A stretch of DNA of 64,000 bases from Narcine bancroftii (taxonomy: Eukaryota), in NCBI RefSeq assembly GCF_036971445.1, contig NC_091476.1:101246001-101310000 (forward strand). The letters are read 5' to 3'. Shown one piece after another: positions 10,100 through 36,222 of this stretch. A program made the position numbers and the translations under genes. Every line of letters starts with the position of its first letter. Position 1 is the stretch's first letter. Under the pieces are notes generated by a model. That model did not search any database and was not told the DNA's origin. It was given only the letters and a program-made list of their open reading frames with translations.

Positions 10100-12960
10100 A
10101 ATTGGAGAGAGCAGGGTGGTACAGTTTCAAGGTATTATATATGAATGCACGGAGTATAAGGAATAAAATGGATGAGTTTGAGGTGCAAATGGACATTGGA
10201 GGTTATGATGTTATTGGAGTAATGGAGACATGGCTGCAGGAGGGACAGGATTGGATAATTAATGTTCCAGAATATGCGCCCTATCAAAAAGACAGAAAGT
10301 TAGGTAGAGGAGGTGGAGTGGCTCTGTTGGTGAAGAATGAAATTCAGGCAATGAAAAAGAAAGACATTGAATCAGGTGGAGTAGAGTCTGTTTGGAGAGA
10401 GTTGAGAAATTGCAATGGCTAAAGAACCATAATGGTAGTTATATACAAACAGTGGCTCTGATGTGGGAATCAGTACAAGTAAAGAATTAAAAATGGCATG
10501 TCAGAGTGGTAGTGATACAGTAGTTATGGGTGACTTCAACTTGCAAGTGGACTGGGAATATCAAGTGGGAAAGCTAGAGAATGAGTTTATTGAATGTCTC
10601 CGAGATACATTCCTGGAGCAGCTTGTGACGGAACCTACCAGGGAAAGTCGATTCTGGACTTGATACTGTGTAACGACGTAGAGTTAATAAGGGACCTTGA
10701 GATAGGGGTGCCATTAGGTAATAGTGACCATAATATGATTACTTTTAATCTGCAAATGGAAAGGGAGAAAAGAAGGAAGTCAGAAACATTAGTGCTACAG
10801 CTAAATAAGGGTGACTATACAGCTATGAGGGAGGAGCTAGCCAAAATAAAATGGAAGGACATTCTAGCTGGGAGGACAACTGGGCAAAAATAGCAGGTAT
10901 TTCAAGATATTTTTCACAGGATTCAGAATAGATTCATCCCAAAGAGGAGGAAAGGCTCTTCGAAGAGCAAATGGCAGCCGTGGCTGACAAAGGAGATTAA
11001 GAGCAGTATCAGGTCTAAAAGAAATAAGTATAAGATGGCAAAGCAGAGTGGGAGGTTAGAGAATTAAAAGCCATCAGAGAGAAACTAAGAAAGTCATTCA
11101 CGAGGGGAAATGAACTACGAGGGCAAATTGGCAAGTAATATAAAATGGGATAGCAAAAGCTTCTTCAGATATGTTAAAAGGAAGAAATTGGTTAGGGCAA
11201 AAATTGGGCCTTTGAAAAGGGAGAAAGGTGAAATTATCATTGGGGACATGGAGATGGCTGAGGAATTTAACAATTACTTTCACCAAGGAGGATATGGGTT
11301 ATGATCCGAATAGGGGTATCTAGGGACTTGGTGAAATTACCGAAGGCAACAGAGAATTTGATGGATATTCAGATCCAGAAGCAGGTGGTTGTGAGCAAAT
11401 TGTTAGAACTGAGGCCTGATGGGCTGCATCCCAGTTGCTTAGAGAGGTTGCTCTGGAAATTGTGGAAGCACTAGTTGACATTTTCCAAAGTACTTTAGAT
11501 TCCGAGGAAGTGCCTGCAGACTGGAGAGTGGCCGATGTTGTACCACTTCTTAAGAAGGGAGGGAGAGAGAATATGGGAAATTATAGACCAGTCAGCCTGA
11601 TGTCAGTAGTGGAGAAGATATTGGAATTCATCATTAAAGGAGAAATAACAGAACATTTAGGAAGGAATAATAGTATAGGCATTAGTCAGCATGGGTTCCT
11701 TAAAGGAAAAATTTCCTTGACTAATCTCCTGGAATTTTTCGAGGACGTAACAAGGAGGGTGGACACAGATATGGGTAGATGTGGTGTACTTGGACTTTCA
11801 GAAAGCCTTCGATAAAATCCCACACAATAGGCTAGTTTGCAAAATCAAGGAGCATGATATCGGGGGTAGGGTGCTGTCATGGAGAGATAATTGGTTGAGA
11901 AATAGGAAACAAAGGTTTGGGATAAACGGGTCATTTTCTGGATGGCAGAATGTGACAAGTGGGGTCCCGCAGGGGTCGGTGTTAGGCCCTCAGTTGTTTA
12001 TCATTTATGTAAATTATTTGGATGAGGGGATAAATAACTACATATACAAATTCGCAGATGACACTAAACTGAGTGGCAGTGTAAAGAGTGAGGAGGATGT
12101 CAGGAAATTGCAAGGGTACTTGGACAGTTTAGGGGAATGGCCGGAAAGATGGCAGATGAAGTTTAATGTGAGTAAATGTGAGGTTGTCCATTTTGGAGGC
12201 AGAAACAAGAGAGCAGAATATTATTTACATGGAGTTAAGCTAGGGAGTGGGGTAATGCAAAGGAATCTGGGCATACTTGTTCACCGGTCATTGAAAACTA
12301 GCATGTAGGTTCAGCAAGTGGTGAAGAAGGCGAATGGTATGTTGGCTTTCATAAAGAGGGGATTGGAGTATAGGAGTAGAGAAGTCCTCCTGCAGTTGTA
12401 CAGGGCCCTGGTGAGACCTCACCTGGAGTATTGCATCCAGTTCTGGTCCCCATATTTAAGAAAGGACATACTTGCTATAGAGGGAGTGCAGCGCAGGTTT
12501 ACAAGGTTAGTTCCCGGGATGGCAGGATTGTCATACCCTGATAGGTTAGAAAGACTTGGATTATATGCGATGGAGTTTAGAAGGATGAGGGGAGATGTGA
12601 TTGAGGTATTTAGGATTATCAAAGGGCTTGACAGGGTGAAATCAAAGCACATGTTCCCAATGATGGGTGAGACTAGGACTAGAGGGCATAGTTTAAGAAT
12701 ACAGGGAAGGCCATTTAAGACAGAAATGAGGAGAATTTTTTTTACCCACAGAGTTGTGGGTCTGTGAAATACATTGCCACGGAGGGTAGTAGGGGCGGAT
12801 TCGTTGGATAGATTTAAGAGAGAGTTGGATAAGGCTCTTGTAGGCAGGGGAGTTAAGGATTATGGGGATAAGGCTGTGATTGGTTATTGAAAGGAAAAGA
12901 TCAGTCATGATCCGATAAGCTCGAAGGGCCAATTTACCTACTCCAGCACCTATTGTCCAT
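10100..12960 (+). mobile_element. CR1 LINE, near-complete ORF2 (APE endonuclease plus RT), pseudogenised
   Basis: YMNARSIRNK, ETWL, MGDFN, GNSDHN (APE); NYRPVSL, QHGF, YLDFQKAFD, GVPQGSVLGP, FADDTK (RT); CR1 3' UTR. Several stops and frameshifts. Confidence 0.92.
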
Positions 12961-23649: not shown

Positions 23650-25914
23650 CTGATTTTATTGTATTTTATCGTGTAGCATCTCCTATATTCTGTCATCATC
23701 CAGCGAGATCTGGCAGGGGTTGCCCTCTATTACCCATATGATGGGAAGTACCCAGAAACTATCCAAAATATATCTTTTTAGGCTACTTACCTTTCACAAG
23801 TTCACCTATGGCTGTACTTGATGAGGTATTTGAGGAGATTTGGTATGTCACCGAAGACTCTTAAAAATTTCTACAGGTGTACTGAGGAGAATGGTTGCAT
23901 CACTGTCTGGTATGGAGGTGCCAAAGCTCAGGACAAGAAAAAAACCGGAGGGTTGGTTGTTAACTTGGCCCATGACATCATGGGCACCACTCCATCAAGG
24001 ACATCTACAAGAGGTGGTGTCTTAAGAAAGCAGCCTCTATCCTCAAGGACCCCCACCACCCAGGCCTGCCCTCTTCACACTACTACCATCGGGGAAAAGG
24101 TACAGGAGCCTGAAGATCAGCACTCAGTAGCACAAGGACAGCTTCTTCCCCTCTTTCATCAGATTCCTGATGACTCAATGAACCAAAGATTCTGCCTTAT
24201 TTTGACTTTTCGGGCACTATTTTTATTTATTTTTAGAAGGTGATTTATATGAACGTTTGCACTCTGATGCCTGCAGTAAAAAAATGACAATAAATTCTGA
24301 TTCTGACATATGCTCAACAAGCTCTATGTAGCACATCCTGCCAGAATATCGTACATCTCTCTCCTGTCTTAAAAAGTTACCACAAAACAATGATTTTGCT
24401 TTTTATTTGGTGATAAGAATTTTTTTTTTAAAAATCCTGTGTCTCTTGCAGATTAGATGGCTATAAGGAAAAAGTTACCTTTAATTATTGACTTTCACTG
24501 TACTTCCCATAATTAAACATCACACAAAATTAATAACTTAAATTGTTTTATATAGTTGGCTTTCCATGAAAATCAGTTTGAAAGGAATGTAGGAGAATTG
24601 ATATAACCTCATTTCTTCTTTCAACCCAATTATTGTTTCTTGTTTCTGATAGACAGTGCTATTCCATTGGAAACTGAGCAGGAAACAATTTTCTTTTGCA
24701 GAAAATTATGGTTTTTGCAGAACCATAATATTAAATCATTCAATTACATCTTGCCTCCAAGAGAGATTCAAGGAGATTTAAGAATTTAAGACATCTTTTA
24801 TTTCTCTTTCAAAACAGAACAGACAAGCAATTTGCAAACAAAATCGAGACCAGTATAAAATGAGCGGCCAGATTCCCCAATATCCATTCTGTGCTGTCTT
24901 CAGAAGAACATAAAATATTTTCTGGCTGTTTTATGGAAAAACTATCTGTCCAAAAAGTCATTGGTCAGCAAACGTCACAGAAAAACAGATGATCTGTTGG
25001 CTCAGTTCATATACTGTTTGTGGAATCTGATTATGTACTGACTGACTGCCGCATTTATCTAAAAGATCAGCAAGATGCTTGCTCTGAAACATCATTCATC
25101 AGCAAGAAGTGTTTTAGATTGCTGAGTGAGCAATACAAGATAAAGCTTTATTTCTCCTGAGGTTCCCAAAGCCAATAAAATGATATCTAACAAAACATAG
25201 GGAAAATGAAAATCCTAAGTGTATCAAAAAGGCAGAATAAAATTTAGAACACACCAAAAAGCAAAGGTAAAGCTAGATCAGAGAATAAGGTAACCATTTT
25301 ACTGCAGCAAACAGTGCAAACAGTCATACAAATCACCTTATAAAAGTAAATAAGTAAAAATAGTGCCCAATAAGTCGAAGTGAGGCAGTGTCTTTGGTTC
25401 ATTGAGTCATCAGGAATTCTGATGAAAGAAGGGAAGAAGCTGTCCTTGTGCTACTGAGTGCTGACCTTCAGGCTCCTGTACCTTTTTCCCGATGGTAGCA
25501 GAGTGAAGAGGGCATGGCCTGGGTGGTGGAGAGGATAGAGGCTGCTTTCTTTAGACACTGTCCTTGATGGAGTGGTGCCCATGATGTCATGGGCCAAGTT
25601 AACAACCCTCTTGTTTTCTTGTCCTGAGCGTTGACACCTCCATACCAGATAGTGATGCAACCAGCCAGAAAACTCTCCTCAGTACACCTGTAGAAATTTT
25701 TGAGAGTCTTTGGTGGCATACCAAATCTCCTCAAACACCTCATAAAGTATAGCCAATAGCAAAGCTGAGGAAGGTAAGCAGCCTGAAAATATATGTTTTG
25801 GATAGTTTCTGGATATTTCCCATCACATGGGTAATAGAGGGCAACTACTGCCAGATTTCACTGGATGATGACAGAATATAGGAGATGCTACATGATAAAA
25901 TACAATAAAATCAG
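23650..25914. repeat. Local inverted duplication, arms about 23650-24281 and 25297-25914, spacer about 1 kb
   Basis: Each arm is about 140 bp of unassigned sequence plus a Rex-type 3' fragment, and the arms are reverse complements (e.g. CTGATTTTATTGTATTTTATC / GATAAAATACAATAAAATCAG). Confidence 0.85.
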
Positions 25915-29499: not shown

Positions 29500-30150
29500 T
29501 CCATTCGGCACATCATTTGAGAGTGAGGAGGTAAGCGAAAGGACCTTAAATCTTCCCACAGGACATACCTGTAGGGGATGTAATGAGACACAAGCATTAA
29601 AAAATAAAATTAAAGAAATGGAGTTGCAGCTTGATGATCTGAGGCTTATCAGGGAGAGTGAAGAATTTATAGATACAACGCTCAGGGAAGTGCTTACCCC
29701 TGGATTGGGGGGGGGGGGGTCAGGTAAGTGGACTACTCTCAGGGGAGGGGGGAAAGTTGCTAGCTCTGTGGTGAGCACCCCGGTGGCTACTGCTCTTAGC
29801 AACAAATATAGTGTATTGGATGTAGTTGGGGAAGACAACCTGCCAGAGGTTGCACCAAGGGAACCGGTGGTGCGGAAAGGAAGGAAGGGGAACAAGGTGG
29901 TCATTGGGGACTCCATCGTCAGGGGAACAGACAAAAGATTCTGCGAACCTGACAAGTGCTCCCGTATGGTGTGTTGCCTCCCAGGAGCTAGGGTGCGAGA
30001 CGTCTCGGATAGGGTTCAGAGTATCCTGGGGGGGAAGGTGAACGGCCAGAAGTCCTGATACACGTGGGTACAAATGACGTGGATAAGATGAAGGAGGAGA
30101 ACCTGAAGAGGGACTACCGTGAGCTCTCCAAATCCAGGAGGAATGCAAGG
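29500..30150 (+). mobile_element. CR1 ORF1 fragment (zinc finger, coiled coil, SGNH esterase)
   Basis: CRGC, ELQLDDLRLIRESEEFID, IGDSIVRG, CCLPGARVRDV, IHVGTND. Confidence 0.85.
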
Positions 30151-30320
30151 TCATGGAAATCAAACCTCAGTAACTCAGAATCAGAATTTATTGTTATGAA
30201 CAAGTCATGAAATTCAGTGTGAAACTATAGTGCCCTCCATAATATTTGGGACAAAGACGCATTTTCTTCCTTTATTTGGCCCTGTGCTCCACAGTTTTAA
30301 AATTGTATTCAAATTATTCA

Positions 30321-31330
30321 CCAATTCTCTTCTTTTAGTTATATCTTCCTTCATTGCTAATTCTTTTTCTATATTTACTATTTCCCTTTCCAACTACTCT
30401 GTTTCCTGGTTATAGTCCTTCTTCATCTTGGTTACATAACTTATTATTTGCCCTCTAATGAATGCTTTCATTGCATCCCATAGTATAAACTTATCTTCCA
30501 CTGATTCCGTATTTATTTCAAAATACATTTTTATTTGTTTTTCAATAAATTCTCTAAAATCCTGCCTTTTAAGTAACATGGGGTTTAATCTCCATCTATA
30601 CATTCTTGGAGGGATGTCTTCTAACTTTACTGTCAATATTAAGGGTGAATGGTCCGATAGTATTCTAGCTTTATATTCTGTTTTTCTTACTCTATCTTGC
30701 ATACGAGCTGATAACAAAAATAGGTCTATTCTTGAGTATGTTTTATGTCTAGCCGAGTAATATGAATATTCCTTTTCCTTTGGGTGTTGTTTCCTCCATA
30801 TATCCAAAAGTTGCATTTCTTCCATCGATTTAATTATAAATTTGGATACTTTGTTCTTTGTTAATTTTTTTCCCAGTTTTGTCCATATTTGAATCCAAAT
30901 TCAGGTTGAAGTCCCCTCCTATTAATATGTTCCCTTGCGTATCTGCTACCTTCAAAAAGATATCTTGCATAAACTTTTGATCTTCTTCGTTAGGTGAATA
31001 TAGATTGAGTAGATTCCAAAACTCCGAATATATCTGACATTTTATCATTACATATCTCCCTGCTGGATCTATTATTTCCTCTTCTATTTTAAATGGCACA
31101 TTTTTACTAATTAATATAGCTACTCCTCTTGCTTTTGAATTATACGATGCTGCTGTTACGTGTCCTACCCAATCTCTCTTTAATTTCTTGTGCTCCAATT
31201 CAGTTAAATGTGTTTCTTGCACAAATGCTATATCAATTTTTTCTTTTTTCAGTAAATTTAGCAGTTTCTTCCTTTTAATTTGGTTATGTATTCCATTAAT
31301 ATTTAAAGTCATATAGTTCAGCGTAGCCAT
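30321..31330 (-). pseudogene. L1 ORF2 N-terminus (APE endonuclease), frameshifted and truncated
   Basis: TLNINGI, QETH, GGDFN, YSRID, SDHSP motifs; frameshift near 30855, stop at 30394, sequence ends at the TSD. Confidence 0.9.
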
Positions 31331-32013
31331 TTTATACTTTGTTTATCTTCCCTTTCCGTTTCTCCATCATTACCTTTCCTTCTTATCCATTTCTGTTTTC
31401 TTGTTTTGAACCCTTTATAAGACAACATTCCTAAAACATCAAACATTTTCCTTATTCTCCTATTTAAAACTTCTTTAGCCCCAATCTCCCCTTCTCCTCC
31501 TGAGTTGTCCTTTATCCCTTGTCGGACAACCACATCTCCCCTCTCCATTTGGATTTGTGAATTCACTCGCAAGCATCAGCTGATTTTGCAGTGACCGCAA
31601 CTCCTCCCCACCCAGCCCCCCCAGAAAAGATTTCACTTTTCATATGTAACAAAGGTCACTCTTTTAGTTCCCTCCTTATTCCCTCTATTCCATTTCCTTC
31701 CCTTATTAATTCTTGTCTATACTATCTATATTTTCCTCTAAATACGGATACATTCATGTATGCACATTATACATATACACACATATACCTCTTTACCCAC
31801 ATACATATAAATCGTGGTCATTTTTACTCTTATTACATGTCTTCATCTCTCTGGTTGTTTTGTAGTTGTTCTGCATATTTCCTTGCTTCCTCTGGATCCG
31901 AGAATAGTTTTTTTTCTTCCCATAAGGTCGTTTTCGATGTATTGAACTCCTTTCTCTTCTTCAGGAGTTCAAAACTTATGTGTCTTTTTAGTTCTCAGTC
32001 TTTTGTCCTCTCG

Positions 32014-32976
32014 TTACACGTCTTCATCCCTCGGTCTATTTTGTAATTGTTCTGCAAATTTTCGTGCTTCCTCTGGATCCGAGAATAGTCTGTTTTGTTG
32101 TCCTGGAATAAATATTTTCAATACCGCTGGATGCTTTTGTATAAATTTATACCCTTTCTTCCATAAAATCGCCTTTGCTGTATTGAACTCCTTTCTCTTC
32201 TTCAGGAGTTCAAAACTTATATCTGGATAAATGAAGATTTTTTGCCCTTTGTACTCCAGTGGCTTGTTGCCCTCTCTTACTTTTTCCATTGTCTTCTCCA
32301 GTACCCTTTCTCTTGTAGTATATCTTAGGAATTTTACTAAAATAGATCTTGGCCTTTGTTGTGGTTGTGGTTTAAAGGCCAATGCTCTATGTGCCCTTTC
32401 TATTTCCATATCTTGCTGTAGTTCTGGACATCCTAGGATCCTGGGGATCCAATCTTTTATAAACTCTCTCATGTTCTTGCCTTCTTCATCTTCCTTAAGG
32501 CCCACTATCTTTATGTTATTTCTTCTGTTATAATTTTCCATTATATCTATTTTCTGAGCTAACAGTTCTTGTGTCTCTATAACTTTTTTATTAGATTCCT
32601 CTAATTTCTTTTTTAAGTCCTCTACCTCCATTTCTACTGCTGCTTCCCGCTCTTCCATCTTGTCCATTTTCTTTCCCATTTCTGTTAAGGTCATATCTAT
32701 TTTATTCATTTTCTCTTCTGTATTGTTTATTCTTCTTCTTAAATCATTAAATTCTTGCACTTGCCATTCTTTAAATGACTCCATGTATTCTTTAATAAGA
32801 GAAAGTATATCCTTTATCTTGCCTTTCCCTTCTTCTTCTATTTCTCTGTACTCTTCCTCTTCCTCTTCTTCTTCCTCTGGGTTGGCCATCTGTTTTTCTT
32901 TGTTGCCCTTCTCTTCTTTCTTGTTTTCGTTGTCTTCTATGTTCTCCTCTTGCTGCAGGTGTTCTGCAGGTGTCAT
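32014..32976 (-). CDS. L1 ORF1p (coiled coil, RRM, CTD), uninterrupted 320 aa
   Basis: ENYNRRNNIKIVGLKE, IERAHR, PRSILVKFLRY and IFIYPDIS are diagnostic L1 ORF1p motifs. Confidence 0.9.
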   Translation of the reverse strand: MTPAEHLQQEENIEDNENKKEEKGNKEKQMANPEEEEEEEEEYREIEEEGKGKIKDILSLIKEYMESFKEWQVQEFNDLRRRINNTEEKMNKIDMTLTEMGKKMDKMEEREAAVEMEVEDLKKKLEESNKKVIETQELLAQKIDIMENYNRRNNIKIVGLKEDEEGKNMREFIKDWIPRILGCPELQQDMEIERAHRALAFKPQPQQRPRSILVKFLRYTTRERVLEKTMEKVREGNKPLEYKGQKIFIYPDISFELLKKRKEFNTAKAILWKKGYKFIQKHPAVLKIFIPGQQNRLFSDPEEARKFAEQLQNRPRDEDV

Positions 32977-33609
32977 TGCCGGCTGTGGAGATCGACTCCC
33001 CAGCTGGTCACCCCTCCCGTCGGTGTGTTTTTTTGCATGCGCGGTTGCGCACTTTTACTCGGCTCAGCGAGCCATTTTTGTAGTCCACTTTTTACCGACC
33101 TGAGGGAGCGGGTATCTCTCTCCACCGCGGGCCTCTTCGAGCAGGTAAGGCCTTCTCCTTCTTCTTCCGTTGTCTTCTCTTCCTCTCTTCTTACCGTTGA
33201 TTTCGATTTTTCTTTTTTCGTCGCCATCTTCTTTCCACCTTTATACTCACTTTTCTTTAATTTTTATTTTTGTGCCTTTGTATTTTCCTTTGTTTTTCCC
33301 GACTTTTCTGGAGAGGGCTGGAGTTCACCGTCCGGCCACTACTCCATGTGACTCCTCCAATTGTATTCAAATTATTCATGTGATTATAGTACACATTCCT
33401 GATTTTATTCAAGGGTATCTGTGTACATTTTGGTGTGGTGATGCTATCTACATTGACTTGAACAAGATCCCACATAGGAGCTTAGTTGAAAAAGGCTTTA
33501 GGTGCATCCTCAAACACTGGCTTGTTTCTGCCATATGTCTAAATTCAAATTTAAAAGCAAAATTAATTATTACCAATGCACTGCATTTGTCTACCTCACT
33601 TTCACACTT

Positions 33610-36222
33610 GGTCATAAAGTCATAGTGTTGTACAGCATGATAAAGGCCCTTCAGTACAACTCATTCATGCCAACCAAGATGGCATTCAGGATTGTCCCAT
33701 TTGCCTGCATTTGCTCCATATCCTTCAAAACCCTTTCTAATGATAAATCTGTCCAAATGCCTTTGAGTATTATAACTATAACTGCTTCCAAATTTTCCAG
33801 ATGCAAAATACCCAGTGAGTTTAAAATATTGCCCCCCAGGTCCCTTTTAAATCTCTTCACTCTCATTATAAACATATGCCCACTTATTCTAGAATTGTCT
33901 ATCATGGGAAAAAGACTGAACATTCACTTGACCCATAGCCCTTATGTTTATAAACCTCTGTAATAGCCTCCTATGCTATTGGGAATTGAAGACCAAGCCT
34001 ATCTAACCTCTTATAATTCAAGCCCAAATCCCAGCAGCATGCTGGAGAATCTTTTCTGCATCCTTTCCAACTTATTGATATTTTTTCTACAGTTGGGTTA
34101 CAAGAACTGCACACAGTACTTCAGCTATGGTCTCGCTAATACCTTGTACAACTGTATCATGAGGTCGCAACTTTTGTACTCAATACCCATCCCAATGAAG
34201 GCAAGTAAGCCAAAAGCCATCTTTACCACCTTGCCCACCTGAGTTGCCACTTTCATAGAATTATGCAAATGGTATTTCTGTACTTCAACAATCTCCAGGG
34301 CCCTGCCATTGGGACCTCTCCTGGGACAATCATGAAGAAAGCACACCACTGTGGCTATATTCCCTTAGACATCTGAAGAGATTTGGTATATCACCAAAGA
34401 CTGATGCAAATTTCTACAGGTATATCATAGAGAGCATTCTGACTGGTTGCATCACTGCCTGCTATAGAGGTGTCAATGCACAGGACAGGAACAGGCTACA
34501 GAGGCTTGTAAGCTCACCCAGTGCCATCATGGGCATTAGTCTTCACTCCATTGAGCACCTCTTTAAGAGGTGGTGTCACAAGAAATCAGCTTCTATCATC
34601 AAGGATCCTCACCACCCAGGTCTTGCTCCTTTCTCACTGCTACCATCAAGAAGAAGGTGGTACAGAAGCCTGAAGACACACACTCAATACAGTATTACAA
34701 AAACAGCTTCTTCCACTCCGCCACCAGATTTCTGGATGGCCAATGAATCTATGGACACCACCTGACTTTTTCTCTTTTCTTGAACATTTTTTAAAAAAAT
34801 GCTGTTCACTGAAGTGTAATTTATAGAAATTTTGCACCTTGTACGGCACAATACTGCTGCCTCAAAACAACAAATTTTGTGGCACATGTTCACATCAGTA
34901 AACCTTTTATTAAAGACCTACCCTGGTTTGACTTACCAAAGTGCAACACCTCACACTTGTCAGTGTGAAATTCTATTTGCCATTCCGTTCTCCACTTTCT
35001 CAACTGATCCCGGTCCTGTTCTAAACTTGGATATACTTTCTCACTGTCCACCACACCACCAATTTCCATGTCATCTGCAGATTTACTAATTGTCATAATT
35101 ATATTGCCAACCAAATTGGTAATATAGATAACAAATACCATTGGACGCTACAGTACACCACTGGTGCAGACCAATTAGTAAAACAATGCTCTACTACCTC
35201 CCTTTGACCCCTTCCACAAAGCCAGTTTTAAATCTAATTGTCCAGCTCACCTTGCACCCCATGTGATGTAATTTTGCACACTGACTTCCTTCGACAGCTC
35301 ATTTCATAAACTCAACACCCTCTGTTGACCCACTGGAACCTTTTAAATCTTTGCTCTCTCATTTTAAATACATCAACTAACTCTGGGAAAAAGACTGACT
35401 CTTCACTTTACTGACATATTTCTGGAGTCTCCCTTTCCGCCATTGATGTGATTTACCAGGATAATTGACTGAAGAGGGGACGCAAGATTGCTGAGGGGAC
35501 CTTCCACTCTGCATACAGCCTCTTTCAGCTTCTCCCATCGGGAAAGAGATACAGGAGTATCAGAGCCAGGATTACCAGGCTGAGAAACAGCTTCTTCCCA
35601 AGGGTAGGGAGAATGCTGAGTGACCAAAGGAGCTGCTCACACTAACCATCTGAGACTTTCATATCCACGAAGCAATATTTATTTTTTCATTTGTAATATG
35701 TATTGTTTTCTGTTCGTGTGTTATGCCTGGTGGTATGTCAGCATGTTTTGCACTGAGGATCAGAGAATGCTGTTTTATTGGGTTATACTTGTACAATCAG
35801 ATGACAATAAACTTGACTTGATTTTACTTGACTTGCATATGTCCCTGATGACTTGATATTCCTCTACACAGTCTCCCCTCAGCCTTCTATCCCCAAGAGA
35901 AAGAAAGTTGTAGCCTTTCCAGCTTTTCCTTGTAGCTCAAGCTATACAACATCCTTGTGAATTATTTTGACCCCTTTCCAGCTTAAAGACATTCTTCCTG
36001 TAGTTGGGTGACCAGACCTATGCACAATTCTTCTAATGCGGACTCATCAATGTCTTGTACAGCTGTAACATGACATCCCAACTCCTGCACTCAGTGCCCT
36101 GACTGATGAAGGAAATAATGGCAAACACATTCTTTGCCACCCTGTCTGCCTGTGTTGCCACCTTCAGGGAACCCCGTACCTATACCTCTCAATCTTTCTG
36201 CTCTACAATATTCTTCAAGGCC
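33610..36222. mobile_element. Mosaic of old CR1 (mostly minus) and Rex-type (plus) fragments
   Basis: CR1 motifs at about 33610-34310, 34890-35400 and 35840-36222; Rex-type 3' ends at about 34330-34880 and 35500-35820. Confidence 0.7.

What the first reader, a model, noticed from the sequence alone, without database searches (positions are those of the whole stretch)
30299..33378. Tailless L1: 5'-complete, 3'-truncated, perfect TSD, oriented against its endonuclease site
Seen: the element runs from its 5' terminus to about 1 kb into ORF2 and stops at ...AGAAGAGAATTGG directly against a perfect 20-bp TSD, with no poly(A). The left flank reads GTTTT/AAAATTG, a canonical L1 endonuclease site whose polarity predicts a plus-strand insertion, but the element is on minus, and two of the four As are missing at the right copy. 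Established: normal TPRT gives 3'-intact, 5'-truncated copies with the TSD starting at the A-run after the tail. Inference: this insertion was primed internally from the second-strand nick, like the inverted arm of twin priming, with the poly(A)-primed arm absent. The intact TSD argues against a simple later deletion.
Basis: partly seen in the sequence, partly recalled or inferred. Interest (0 to 1): 0.8.

Follow-up and report, generated by a model that had tools for sequence, protein, structure and literature searches.

The report
Tailless half L1 copy, ray genome
A 3-kb front half of a LINE-1 jumping gene in an electric-ray genome was pasted in without its usual poly(A) tail. It lies the "wrong way round" relative to the enzyme's cutting site, which is a rare by-product of L1 copying already described in primates rather than a new mechanism.

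Summary
Window 30321-33358 (minus strand, 3038 bp) is an L1 copy that starts at the family's own 5' terminus. It carries an intact 320-aa ORF1 and stops about 1010 nt into ORF2, near residue 338 and upstream of the RT domain. It has no A-run and lies between two perfect 20-bp repeats (30301-30320 and 33359-33378).

Paralogous copies of the host repeat carry this 20-mer once, so it is a true target-site duplication. A palindromic TTTTAAAA sits 2 nt outside the TSD, at the end next to the element's 5' end after insertion. Reverse transcription must therefore have been primed by the + strand 3'-OH at the other TSD edge (...TTATTCA-3'), at an internal site of the RNA.

This is the limiting case of the 39 poly(T)-headed primate L1 loci of Meyer et al. 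2010. Tailless 3'-truncated L1 copies with TSDs were counted in human by Noll et al. 2015.

The microhomology test stayed indirect.

It is one locus of a known kind, of modest interest. The scan had not noted this type before, although an RTE twin-priming case lies 3.3 kb away.

The parts
30295..30302 (.). Palindromic TTTTAAAA, a canonical L1 endonuclease-type site (TTTT/AA on either strand). Its centre lies 2 nt outside the TSD.
   Evidence: TTTTAAAA occurs 7 times and TTAAAA 49 times in 64 kb. It is host sequence, because a paralog reads GGTTTTAAAT at the same place (table 5c).
30301..30320 (.). Left copy of the 20-bp target-site duplication. It abuts the element's truncated 3' end.
   Evidence: (family D7, 100%).
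30321..31330 (-). First 1010 nt of L1 ORF2: the endonuclease domain and the start of the linker. It is broken by a frame shift near 30826-30858 and a TAG at 30394-30396, and it ends at about residue 338, upstream of RT.
   Evidence: table 3 (30396 A>G in other copies) and table 4 (2 nt put in at 30858 in a small share of the other copies' contigs).
31331..32013 (-). Spacer between ORF1 and ORF2. It holds a partial duplicate (31817-31979) of the ORF1 3' end and downstream sequence (31998-32220).
   Evidence: (D1 and D2). The joint 32042->31790 appears in all four runs (table 5c).
32014..32976 (-). Intact L1 ORF1, 320 aa.
   Evidence: 90% identical over full length to the NCBI 'LINE-1 retrotransposable element ORF1 protein' of Narcine bancroftii.
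32977..33358 (-). 5' leader up to the family's 5' terminus (sense GGAGGAGTCACATGG...).
   Evidence: table 7: other copies end at the same point and continue into unrelated flanks.
33359..33378 (.). Right copy of the 20-bp target-site duplication. It abuts the element's 5' end.

Best explanation
An L1 ribonucleoprotein engaged a host-repeat site that carries TTTTAAAA. The minus strand was nicked at the canonical TTTT/AAAA (between 30298 and 30299). The + strand was nicked 22 nt away, at TTCA/TGTG. The usual poly(A)-primed cDNA from the canonical nick never started or was lost. Instead the + strand 3' end (...AAATTATTCA-3') annealed inside the L1 RNA, about 3.04 kb from its 5' end, and primed reverse transcription that ran off the RNA's 5' end. 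The cDNA end was then joined without homology to the other target end, which lost 2 T. Fill-in produced a 20-bp TSD. The outcome is a single 'inverted arm' of twin priming: 5'-complete, 3'-truncated, tailless, and antisense to the endonuclease site. Shown: the anatomy, the TSD, the 5' terminus, the single-copy target in paralogs, and the position of the EN-type site. Inferred: the order of the two nicks, a full-length RNA as template, and microhomology at the priming site.
For: The perfect 20-bp TSD is unique in the window. Paralogous host-repeat contigs carry the 20-mer once and join both flanks (tables 5 and 5c). The element ends at the shared family 5' terminus, which means RT run-off on RNA rather than a DNA-level copy (table 7). 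There is no A-run at the 3' end, and ORF2 is cut at about residue 338 of a roughly 1230-1270-aa protein. A canonical EN-type site lies 2 nt from the TSD edge opposite the priming end, with chance about 0.004. [quoted passage not shown] RT extension of the reciprocal break end has been seen in experimental L1 integration intermediates (bioRxiv 10.1101/2024.12.14.628481). There is a hint of microhomology: in ungapped register the closest ORF2 relative, P0016, reads ...RLVN where the window reads ...EL|VN, with V-N encoded by the TSD (G|TG AAT). Kojima 2010 found microhomology, mostly 2-5 bp, at over 95% of junctions of inverted arms (PMC2912911).
Against: This is a single locus, and the final structure does not record which nick came first. 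No trace of a poly(A)/poly(T) arm is left, unlike all 39 loci of Meyer et al. The TSD edge is 2 nt off the canonical cut, so end trimming has to be assumed. The endonuclease preference of this ray L1 family was not measured here. The microhomology hint rests on one relative at 50% identity and fixes only 3 of 5 bases. The family's normal 3' tail is unknown to me.
Confidence: 0.5

Rival explanations
1. Plain 'tailless' internal priming. The first nick was the non-canonical + strand cut TTCA/TGTG, or a pre-existing nick there. Its 3' end primed inside the L1 RNA, or at the end of a broken, tail-less L1 RNA. The TTTTAAAA at the other edge is merely where the second strand was cut, or a coincidence.
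For: Tailless, 3'-truncated retrocopies with TSDs are numerous in mammals, and 90 5'-complete 3'-truncated L1 copies with TSDs were counted in human (PMC5322556). The final structure is identical to that of the twin-priming variant. If second-strand cleavage is also made by the L1 endonuclease, it could favour TTTT/AA.
Against: Tailless retropseudogenes have TT/WAAAA at the priming (3') junction and A-rich end points. Here that junction is ACA/TGAATAA, and the element ends in ...GAATTGG. This reading needs two unusual steps, a non-canonical first nick and non-poly(A) priming, plus a chance of about 0.4% for the canonical site at the other edge.
Confidence: 0.27
2. The polarity is not reversed at all. 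Because TTTTAAAA is a palindrome, the + strand was nicked at TTTT/AAAA. Its 3' end was extended about 22 nt on the DNA template by strand displacement. The polymerase then switched to an internal site of the L1 RNA, and the displaced flap, trimmed by 2 nt, was rejoined at the cDNA end. This also yields a 20-bp duplication.
For: The site is a perfect palindrome, so a canonical nick on the + strand agrees with a minus-strand element. The right-hand junction CC|AATTG equals the displaced 5' end minus 2 nt.
Against: I know of no described precedent for L1, and none turned up in the papers read. It needs DNA-templated synthesis, a template switch and flap rejoining, which is more steps than twin priming.
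Confidence: 0.08
3. Not a primary insertion product. Either a normal tailed L1 was later deleted at its 3' end, or a DNA-level capture or templated insertion brought in an L1 fragment, or the structure is an assembly artefact.
For: The copy is not young: it has a frame shift, a stop codon and CpG decay, so there was time for rearrangement. Junction-spanning reads could not be inspected.
Against: A deletion would have to end exactly at the TSD edge. A DNA-level copy would not stop exactly at the family's 5' terminus. A misjoin does not create a perfect 20-bp duplication of a target that is single-copy in paralogs. Endonuclease-independent insertions characteristically lack TSDs (my recollection of Morrish et al. 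2002 and Sen et al. 2007, PMC1920257, of which only the abstract was seen here).
Confidence: 0.05

Closest known systems
Poly(T)-headed, 3'-truncated L1 insertions = twin (or dual) priming with a very short direct arm (Meyer, Srikanta, Conlin & Batzer 2010, Mob DNA 1:7; PMC2837659)
   Same: A single L1 segment lies between TSDs. [quoted passage not shown] The 3' end lies inside L1 and has no tail. The junction on the canonical side formed without homology.
   Different: Those 39 primate loci keep a poly(T) stretch (the reverse-transcribed tail) at the 5' end, and they are 5'-truncated. Here no T beyond the target is present, and 2 target T are even missing. The arm also reaches the RNA's very 5' end, and the host is an electric ray.
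Classical twin priming / 5'-inverted L1 (Ostertag & Kazazian 2001, cited; junction statistics in Kojima 2010, PMC2912911)
   Same: The second-strand 3' overhang primes inside the L1 RNA. TSDs are normal. Microhomology is expected at the junction of the inverted arm.
   Different: The defining second, poly(A)-bearing arm is absent.
Tailless retropseudogenes and tailless L1 (Schmitz et al. 2004; Noll et al. 2015, GBE 7:889; PMC5322556)
   Same: The copy is 3'-truncated, lacks oligo(A), has perfect TSDs, is 5'-complete and was made by L1 machinery. A count of 90 such L1 copies in human is given.
   Different: Their target consensus TT/WAAAA lies at the priming junction and their end points are A-rich. 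Here the priming junction is non-canonical and the canonical site is at the other edge.
Endonuclease-independent L1 insertion (Sen et al. 2007, PMC1920257)
   Same: It can also be 3'-truncated and tailless.
   Different: By my recollection those insertions lack TSDs and EN sites. This copy has a 20-bp TSD and an adjacent EN-type site.

Membership tests
L1-clade LINE | ORF1 protein homologous to L1 ORF1p | tested here: met
   90% identity over 320 aa to the NCBI 'LINE-1 retrotransposable element ORF1 protein' of Narcine bancroftii, and 33% identity to an 'L1 transposable element RRM domain-containing' protein of Huso huso. No Pfam ORF1 model scored.
L1-clade LINE | ORF2 begins with an APE-type endonuclease | tested here: met
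   PF03372, E 2.5e-12. Full-length relatives have EN at 1-240 and RT at 525-780.
L1-clade LINE | Reverse transcriptase domain and a 3' UTR with an A-rich tail in the copy | tested here: not met
   The copy stops at about residue 338 of ORF2 and has no A-run. This is the truncation under study, not evidence against the family.
Twin priming (classical) | Two L1 arms in opposite orientation inside one TSD pair | tested here: not met
   Only one arm is present. No L1 sequence lies between 33358 and the TSD, or left of 30321.
Twin priming (classical) | Canonical EN site on the strand that would prime the poly(A) arm, at the TSD edge away from the inverted arm's priming site | tested here: met
   TTTT/AAAA lies at 30295-30302, 2 nt outside the TSD. 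The chance of this is about 0.004.
Twin priming (classical) | Microhomology between the target 3' overhang and the L1 RNA at the start of the inverted arm | tested here: inconclusive
   No close full-length copy could be fetched. The relative P0016 reads V-N where the TSD encodes V-N, which is compatible with 1-5 nt.
Poly(T)-headed L1 (Meyer 2010) | Poly(T) stretch between the 5' TSD and the sense L1 | tested here: not met
   The sense junction reads ...ACAATT|GGAGG, and the target itself reads ...ACAATTTT.
Poly(T)-headed L1 (Meyer 2010) | [quoted passage not shown] | tested here: met
   the 3' junction is ACA/TGAATAA. The other edge is as described above.
Tailless retropseudogene (Noll 2015) | No oligo(A), 3' truncation, flanking TSDs, 5' end complete | tested here: met
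Tailless retropseudogene (Noll 2015) | Target TT/WAAAA at the priming junction and an A-rich end point | tested here: not met
   The priming junction is ACA/TGAATAA and the element ends in ...AAAAGAAGAGAATTGG.
Endonuclease-independent L1 insertion | No TSD and no EN site | tested here: not met
   A perfect 20-bp TSD and an adjacent TTTTAAAA are present.

The most novel reading that the evidence does not exclude
Priming from the second strand alone is a recurrent pathway of this ray's L1, not a one-off. It yields tail-less copies that keep the promoter, leader and an intact ORF1. Such copies, read through into downstream host DNA, could have been the seeds of the very abundant ORF1-only 'half-L1' families, one with a captured HSP90 scrap, that earlier notes report in this genome.
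Probability: 0.08. Interest if true: 0.6.

Novelty: new member of a known kind. Interest (0 to 1): 0.3.

Why it matters
If the reading is right, this locus is a clean snapshot of a TPRT intermediate in which only the reciprocal (second-strand) end was extended. It would extend twin-priming-type events to L1 of cartilaginous fish and show that the inverted arm can reach the RNA's 5' end. Copies of this type escape the usual screens, which require two arms or a poly(T). Tailless-L1 counts such as those of Noll et al. 2015 may therefore hide a class with reversed polarity. As a single, slightly decayed copy it changes no established model.

Tried and rejected
**Fetching full-length copies of the family to read the bases 3' of the breakpoint**
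- The word search with the 143-aa ORF2 piece found only relatives of at most 52% identity, because of its length limit.
- A 20-mer scan of metagenome contigs gave 8 chance hits with no L1 similarity.
- The window holds no second copy.
- The big protein search was used because the word search left this open. It returned only representatives of at most 45% identity, plus one at 60% over just 70 residues, so no Narcine ORF2p is in that library.
- I built no family consensus.

**Other dead ends**
- The Rfam scan of 28-36 kb found nothing.
- Earlier findings searched by sequence gave a blank, which means nothing.

**Readings rejected**
- Premature polyadenylation: there is no A-run and no AATAAA within 50 nt of the end.
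- A retrocopy of an antisense transcript: its 3' end would have to coincide exactly with the L1 5' terminus.
- The left flank as a continuation of ORF2: there is no protein similarity, and the flanks are contiguous in paralogs.
- The 20-mer as part of L1: other copies diverge at 33358.

Full report
**What is there**

The stretch 30321-33358 is a single copy, on the minus strand, of a very abundant LINE family.

- In sense orientation it has a 382-nt leader, then an intact ORF1 of 320 aa (32976-32014).
- A 683-nt spacer follows. It contains a partial duplicate of the ORF1 3' end.
- Last come the first 1010 nt of ORF2, from 31330.
- ORF1 is 90% identical over its full length to a protein that NCBI names 'LINE-1 retrotransposable element ORF1 protein' of Narcine bancroftii.
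- The ORF2 part carries an APE-type endonuclease domain (PF03372).
- It is decayed, with a frame shift near 30826-30858 and a TAG at 30394-30396. Practically all other copies read CAG at that codon (table 3).
- Full-length relatives have EN at residues 1-240 and RT at 525-780 of about 1230-1270 aa. The window's second ORF2 piece aligns to about residues 180-313 of them.
- The copy therefore stops near residue 338, in the linker before RT. In sense, the last bases are ...AAAAGAAGAGAATTGG, with no A-run.

**The duplication**

AATTGTATTCAAATTATTCA stands at 30301-30320 and 33359-33378, directly against both ends of the element. It occurs nowhere else in the window, even with 3 mismatches (0.05 expected).

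Laying Logan contigs of four runs on 29500-34200 gave three useful results.

- The L1 part is hugely repeated in the probable source organism and in a close relative.
- Contigs of other copies in two other organisms run to ...CACGTGACTCCTC(C) and then go into unrelated sequence, at the very point where this copy meets the TSD. So 33358 is the family's 5' terminus. This copy reads CATGTG there, a CpG decay.
- The flanks belong to a moderately repeated host element. Five single-depth contigs of its paralogs join 30258-30307 directly to 33361-33394. For example, one reads ...GGTTTTAAAT followed by TTGTATTCAAATTATTCATGTG.... These are paralogous empty sites that carry the 20-mer once.

The 20-mer is therefore target sequence duplicated by the insertion. 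It is neither part of L1 nor a chance repeat. An orthologous empty site was not seen, and the short contigs cannot bridge the junctions.

**Geometry**

A TSD made by target-primed reverse transcription implies two staggered nicks. One is on the minus strand at the left TSD edge and the other on the + strand at the right edge, each leaving a 3' overhang.

The cDNA of a minus-strand element is part of the + strand. It was therefore primed by the + strand 3'-OH at 30320 (...AAATTATTCA-3'), a site (TTCA/TGTG) that does not resemble TTTT/AA. Priming took place 3038 nt from the RNA's 5' end, not on a tail.

The other edge lies 2 nt inside a perfect TTTTAAAA (30295-30302), which is host sequence in the paralog too. 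TTAAAA occurs 49 times in 64 kb. A canonical site in that polarity within 2 nt of a given edge is thus expected in about 0.4% of cases.

TTTTAAAA is a palindrome, so the statement about polarity rests on the TSD geometry and not on the motif alone.

**Mechanism**

That the insertion was RNA-mediated and made by L1 machinery is well supported. The evidence is the exact 5' terminus (RT run-off), a 20-bp TSD, and an adjacent EN-type site. What cannot be read from one locus is the order of events.

The most economical account runs as follows.

1. A canonical first nick was made on the minus strand.
2. The poly(A)-primed cDNA failed or was lost.
3. The second-strand overhang primed internally and the RT ran to the 5' end.
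4. The ends were joined without homology, with loss of 2 T.

This is twin priming without the direct arm.

Three papers bear on this account.

- Meyer et al. 2010 (PMC2837659) described 39 primate L1 loci with the same geometry. [quoted passage not shown] They explained these loci as twin priming in which the first RT never left the tail. Their loci keep a poly(T); this one keeps nothing.
- Experimental L1 integration intermediates with RT extension of the reciprocal end have been reported (bioRxiv 10.1101/2024.12.14.628481).
- Noll et al. 2015 (PMC5322556) counted 90 5'-complete, 3'-truncated tailless L1 copies with TSDs in human. They assign tailless copies to internal priming at TT/WAAAA targets with A-rich end points. 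This locus does not show either feature at its priming junction.

**Microhomology**

Kojima 2010 (PMC2912911) found microhomology, mostly 2-5 bp, at over 95% of junctions of inverted arms. The prediction is therefore that the L1 RNA just 3' of ...GAAUUGG begins like UGAAU.... I could not read that sequence.

- The word search, the metagenome pattern scan and the exhaustive protein search gave no close relative.

One indirect hint remains. The ORF2 frame stays open across the junction (...KRREL|VNNL...). In ungapped register from the conserved LE.EI...EKE anchor, the closest relative (P0016, 50% identical) reads ...YQRLVN, where the window reads ...RRELVN with V-N encoded by the TSD bases G|TG AAT.

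If the family also has V-N there, 3 of the first 5 bases are fixed matches and up to 5 could match. Because this rests on one distant relative, I count it as suggestive only.

**Rivals**

- Plain internal priming at a non-canonical first nick, possibly on a broken RNA: 0.27.
- A + strand nick in the palindrome, followed by short DNA-templated extension and a switch to RNA: 0.08.
- Later deletion, DNA-level capture or misassembly: 0.05. A deletion ending exactly at the TSD, or a DNA copy ending exactly at the L1 5' terminus, is very unlikely. A misjoin does not duplicate a single-copy target.

**Unexplained detail**

The hexamer AATTGG stands at both junctions in sense orientation (...ACAATT|GGAGG at the 5' junction and ...GAGAATTGG| at the 3' end). 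I have no use for it and it may be chance.

**Verdict**

The kind is already described in primates, in Meyer et al. 2010 and Noll et al. 2015. This is a new member of a known kind: a limiting case in a cartilaginous fish.

Noticed in passing
window 30175-30214: A stretch of about 40 bp in the left flank matches over 1000 contigs of the probable source run, and these continue differently on both sides (loose ends at 30175 and 30214). It looks like a shared module of some very abundant element. It is not L1 as far as tested.
   Followed up: no
window ~29500-30320 and 33379-34200: The DNA that received the L1 belongs to a repeat family; its summed contig depth is about 100-300 times single-copy depth. 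Its paralogs supply the empty-site evidence. No Pfam domain was found in its ORFs, so it remains unnamed.
   Followed up: partly
window 31790-32220: The ORF1 3' end and the sequence after it are partly duplicated (31817-31979 against 31998-32220, 82-90% identical). Contigs of all four organisms show a joint 32042->31790, so the number of these units of roughly 250 bp seems to vary among family members.
   Followed up: no
window 11781-12308 (+), within about 10-18 kb: There is an RT-bearing LINE fragment (RVT_1, E 2.5e-22) in a long purine-skewed stretch. It has no similarity to this L1's ORF1 or EN, so it belongs to another LINE family.
   Followed up: no
window 34371-34768, 23828-24182, 25378-25733: Three copies, one of them inverted, of a repeat of about 380 bp at 69-72% identity.
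   Followed up: no
proteins P0002, P0003, P0005, P0007, P0008: NCBI gene models of several rays (named FAM122B, GrpE-like, transcriptional adapter 1, ADAT1, syntaxin-binding protein 6 'isoforms') match L1 ORF1 over 54-98% of the query. They are probably annotation chimeras that swallowed an L1 ORF1.
   Followed up: no
That makes two priming accidents of different LINE families in one 10-kb neighbourhood, probably by coincidence.
   Followed up: no
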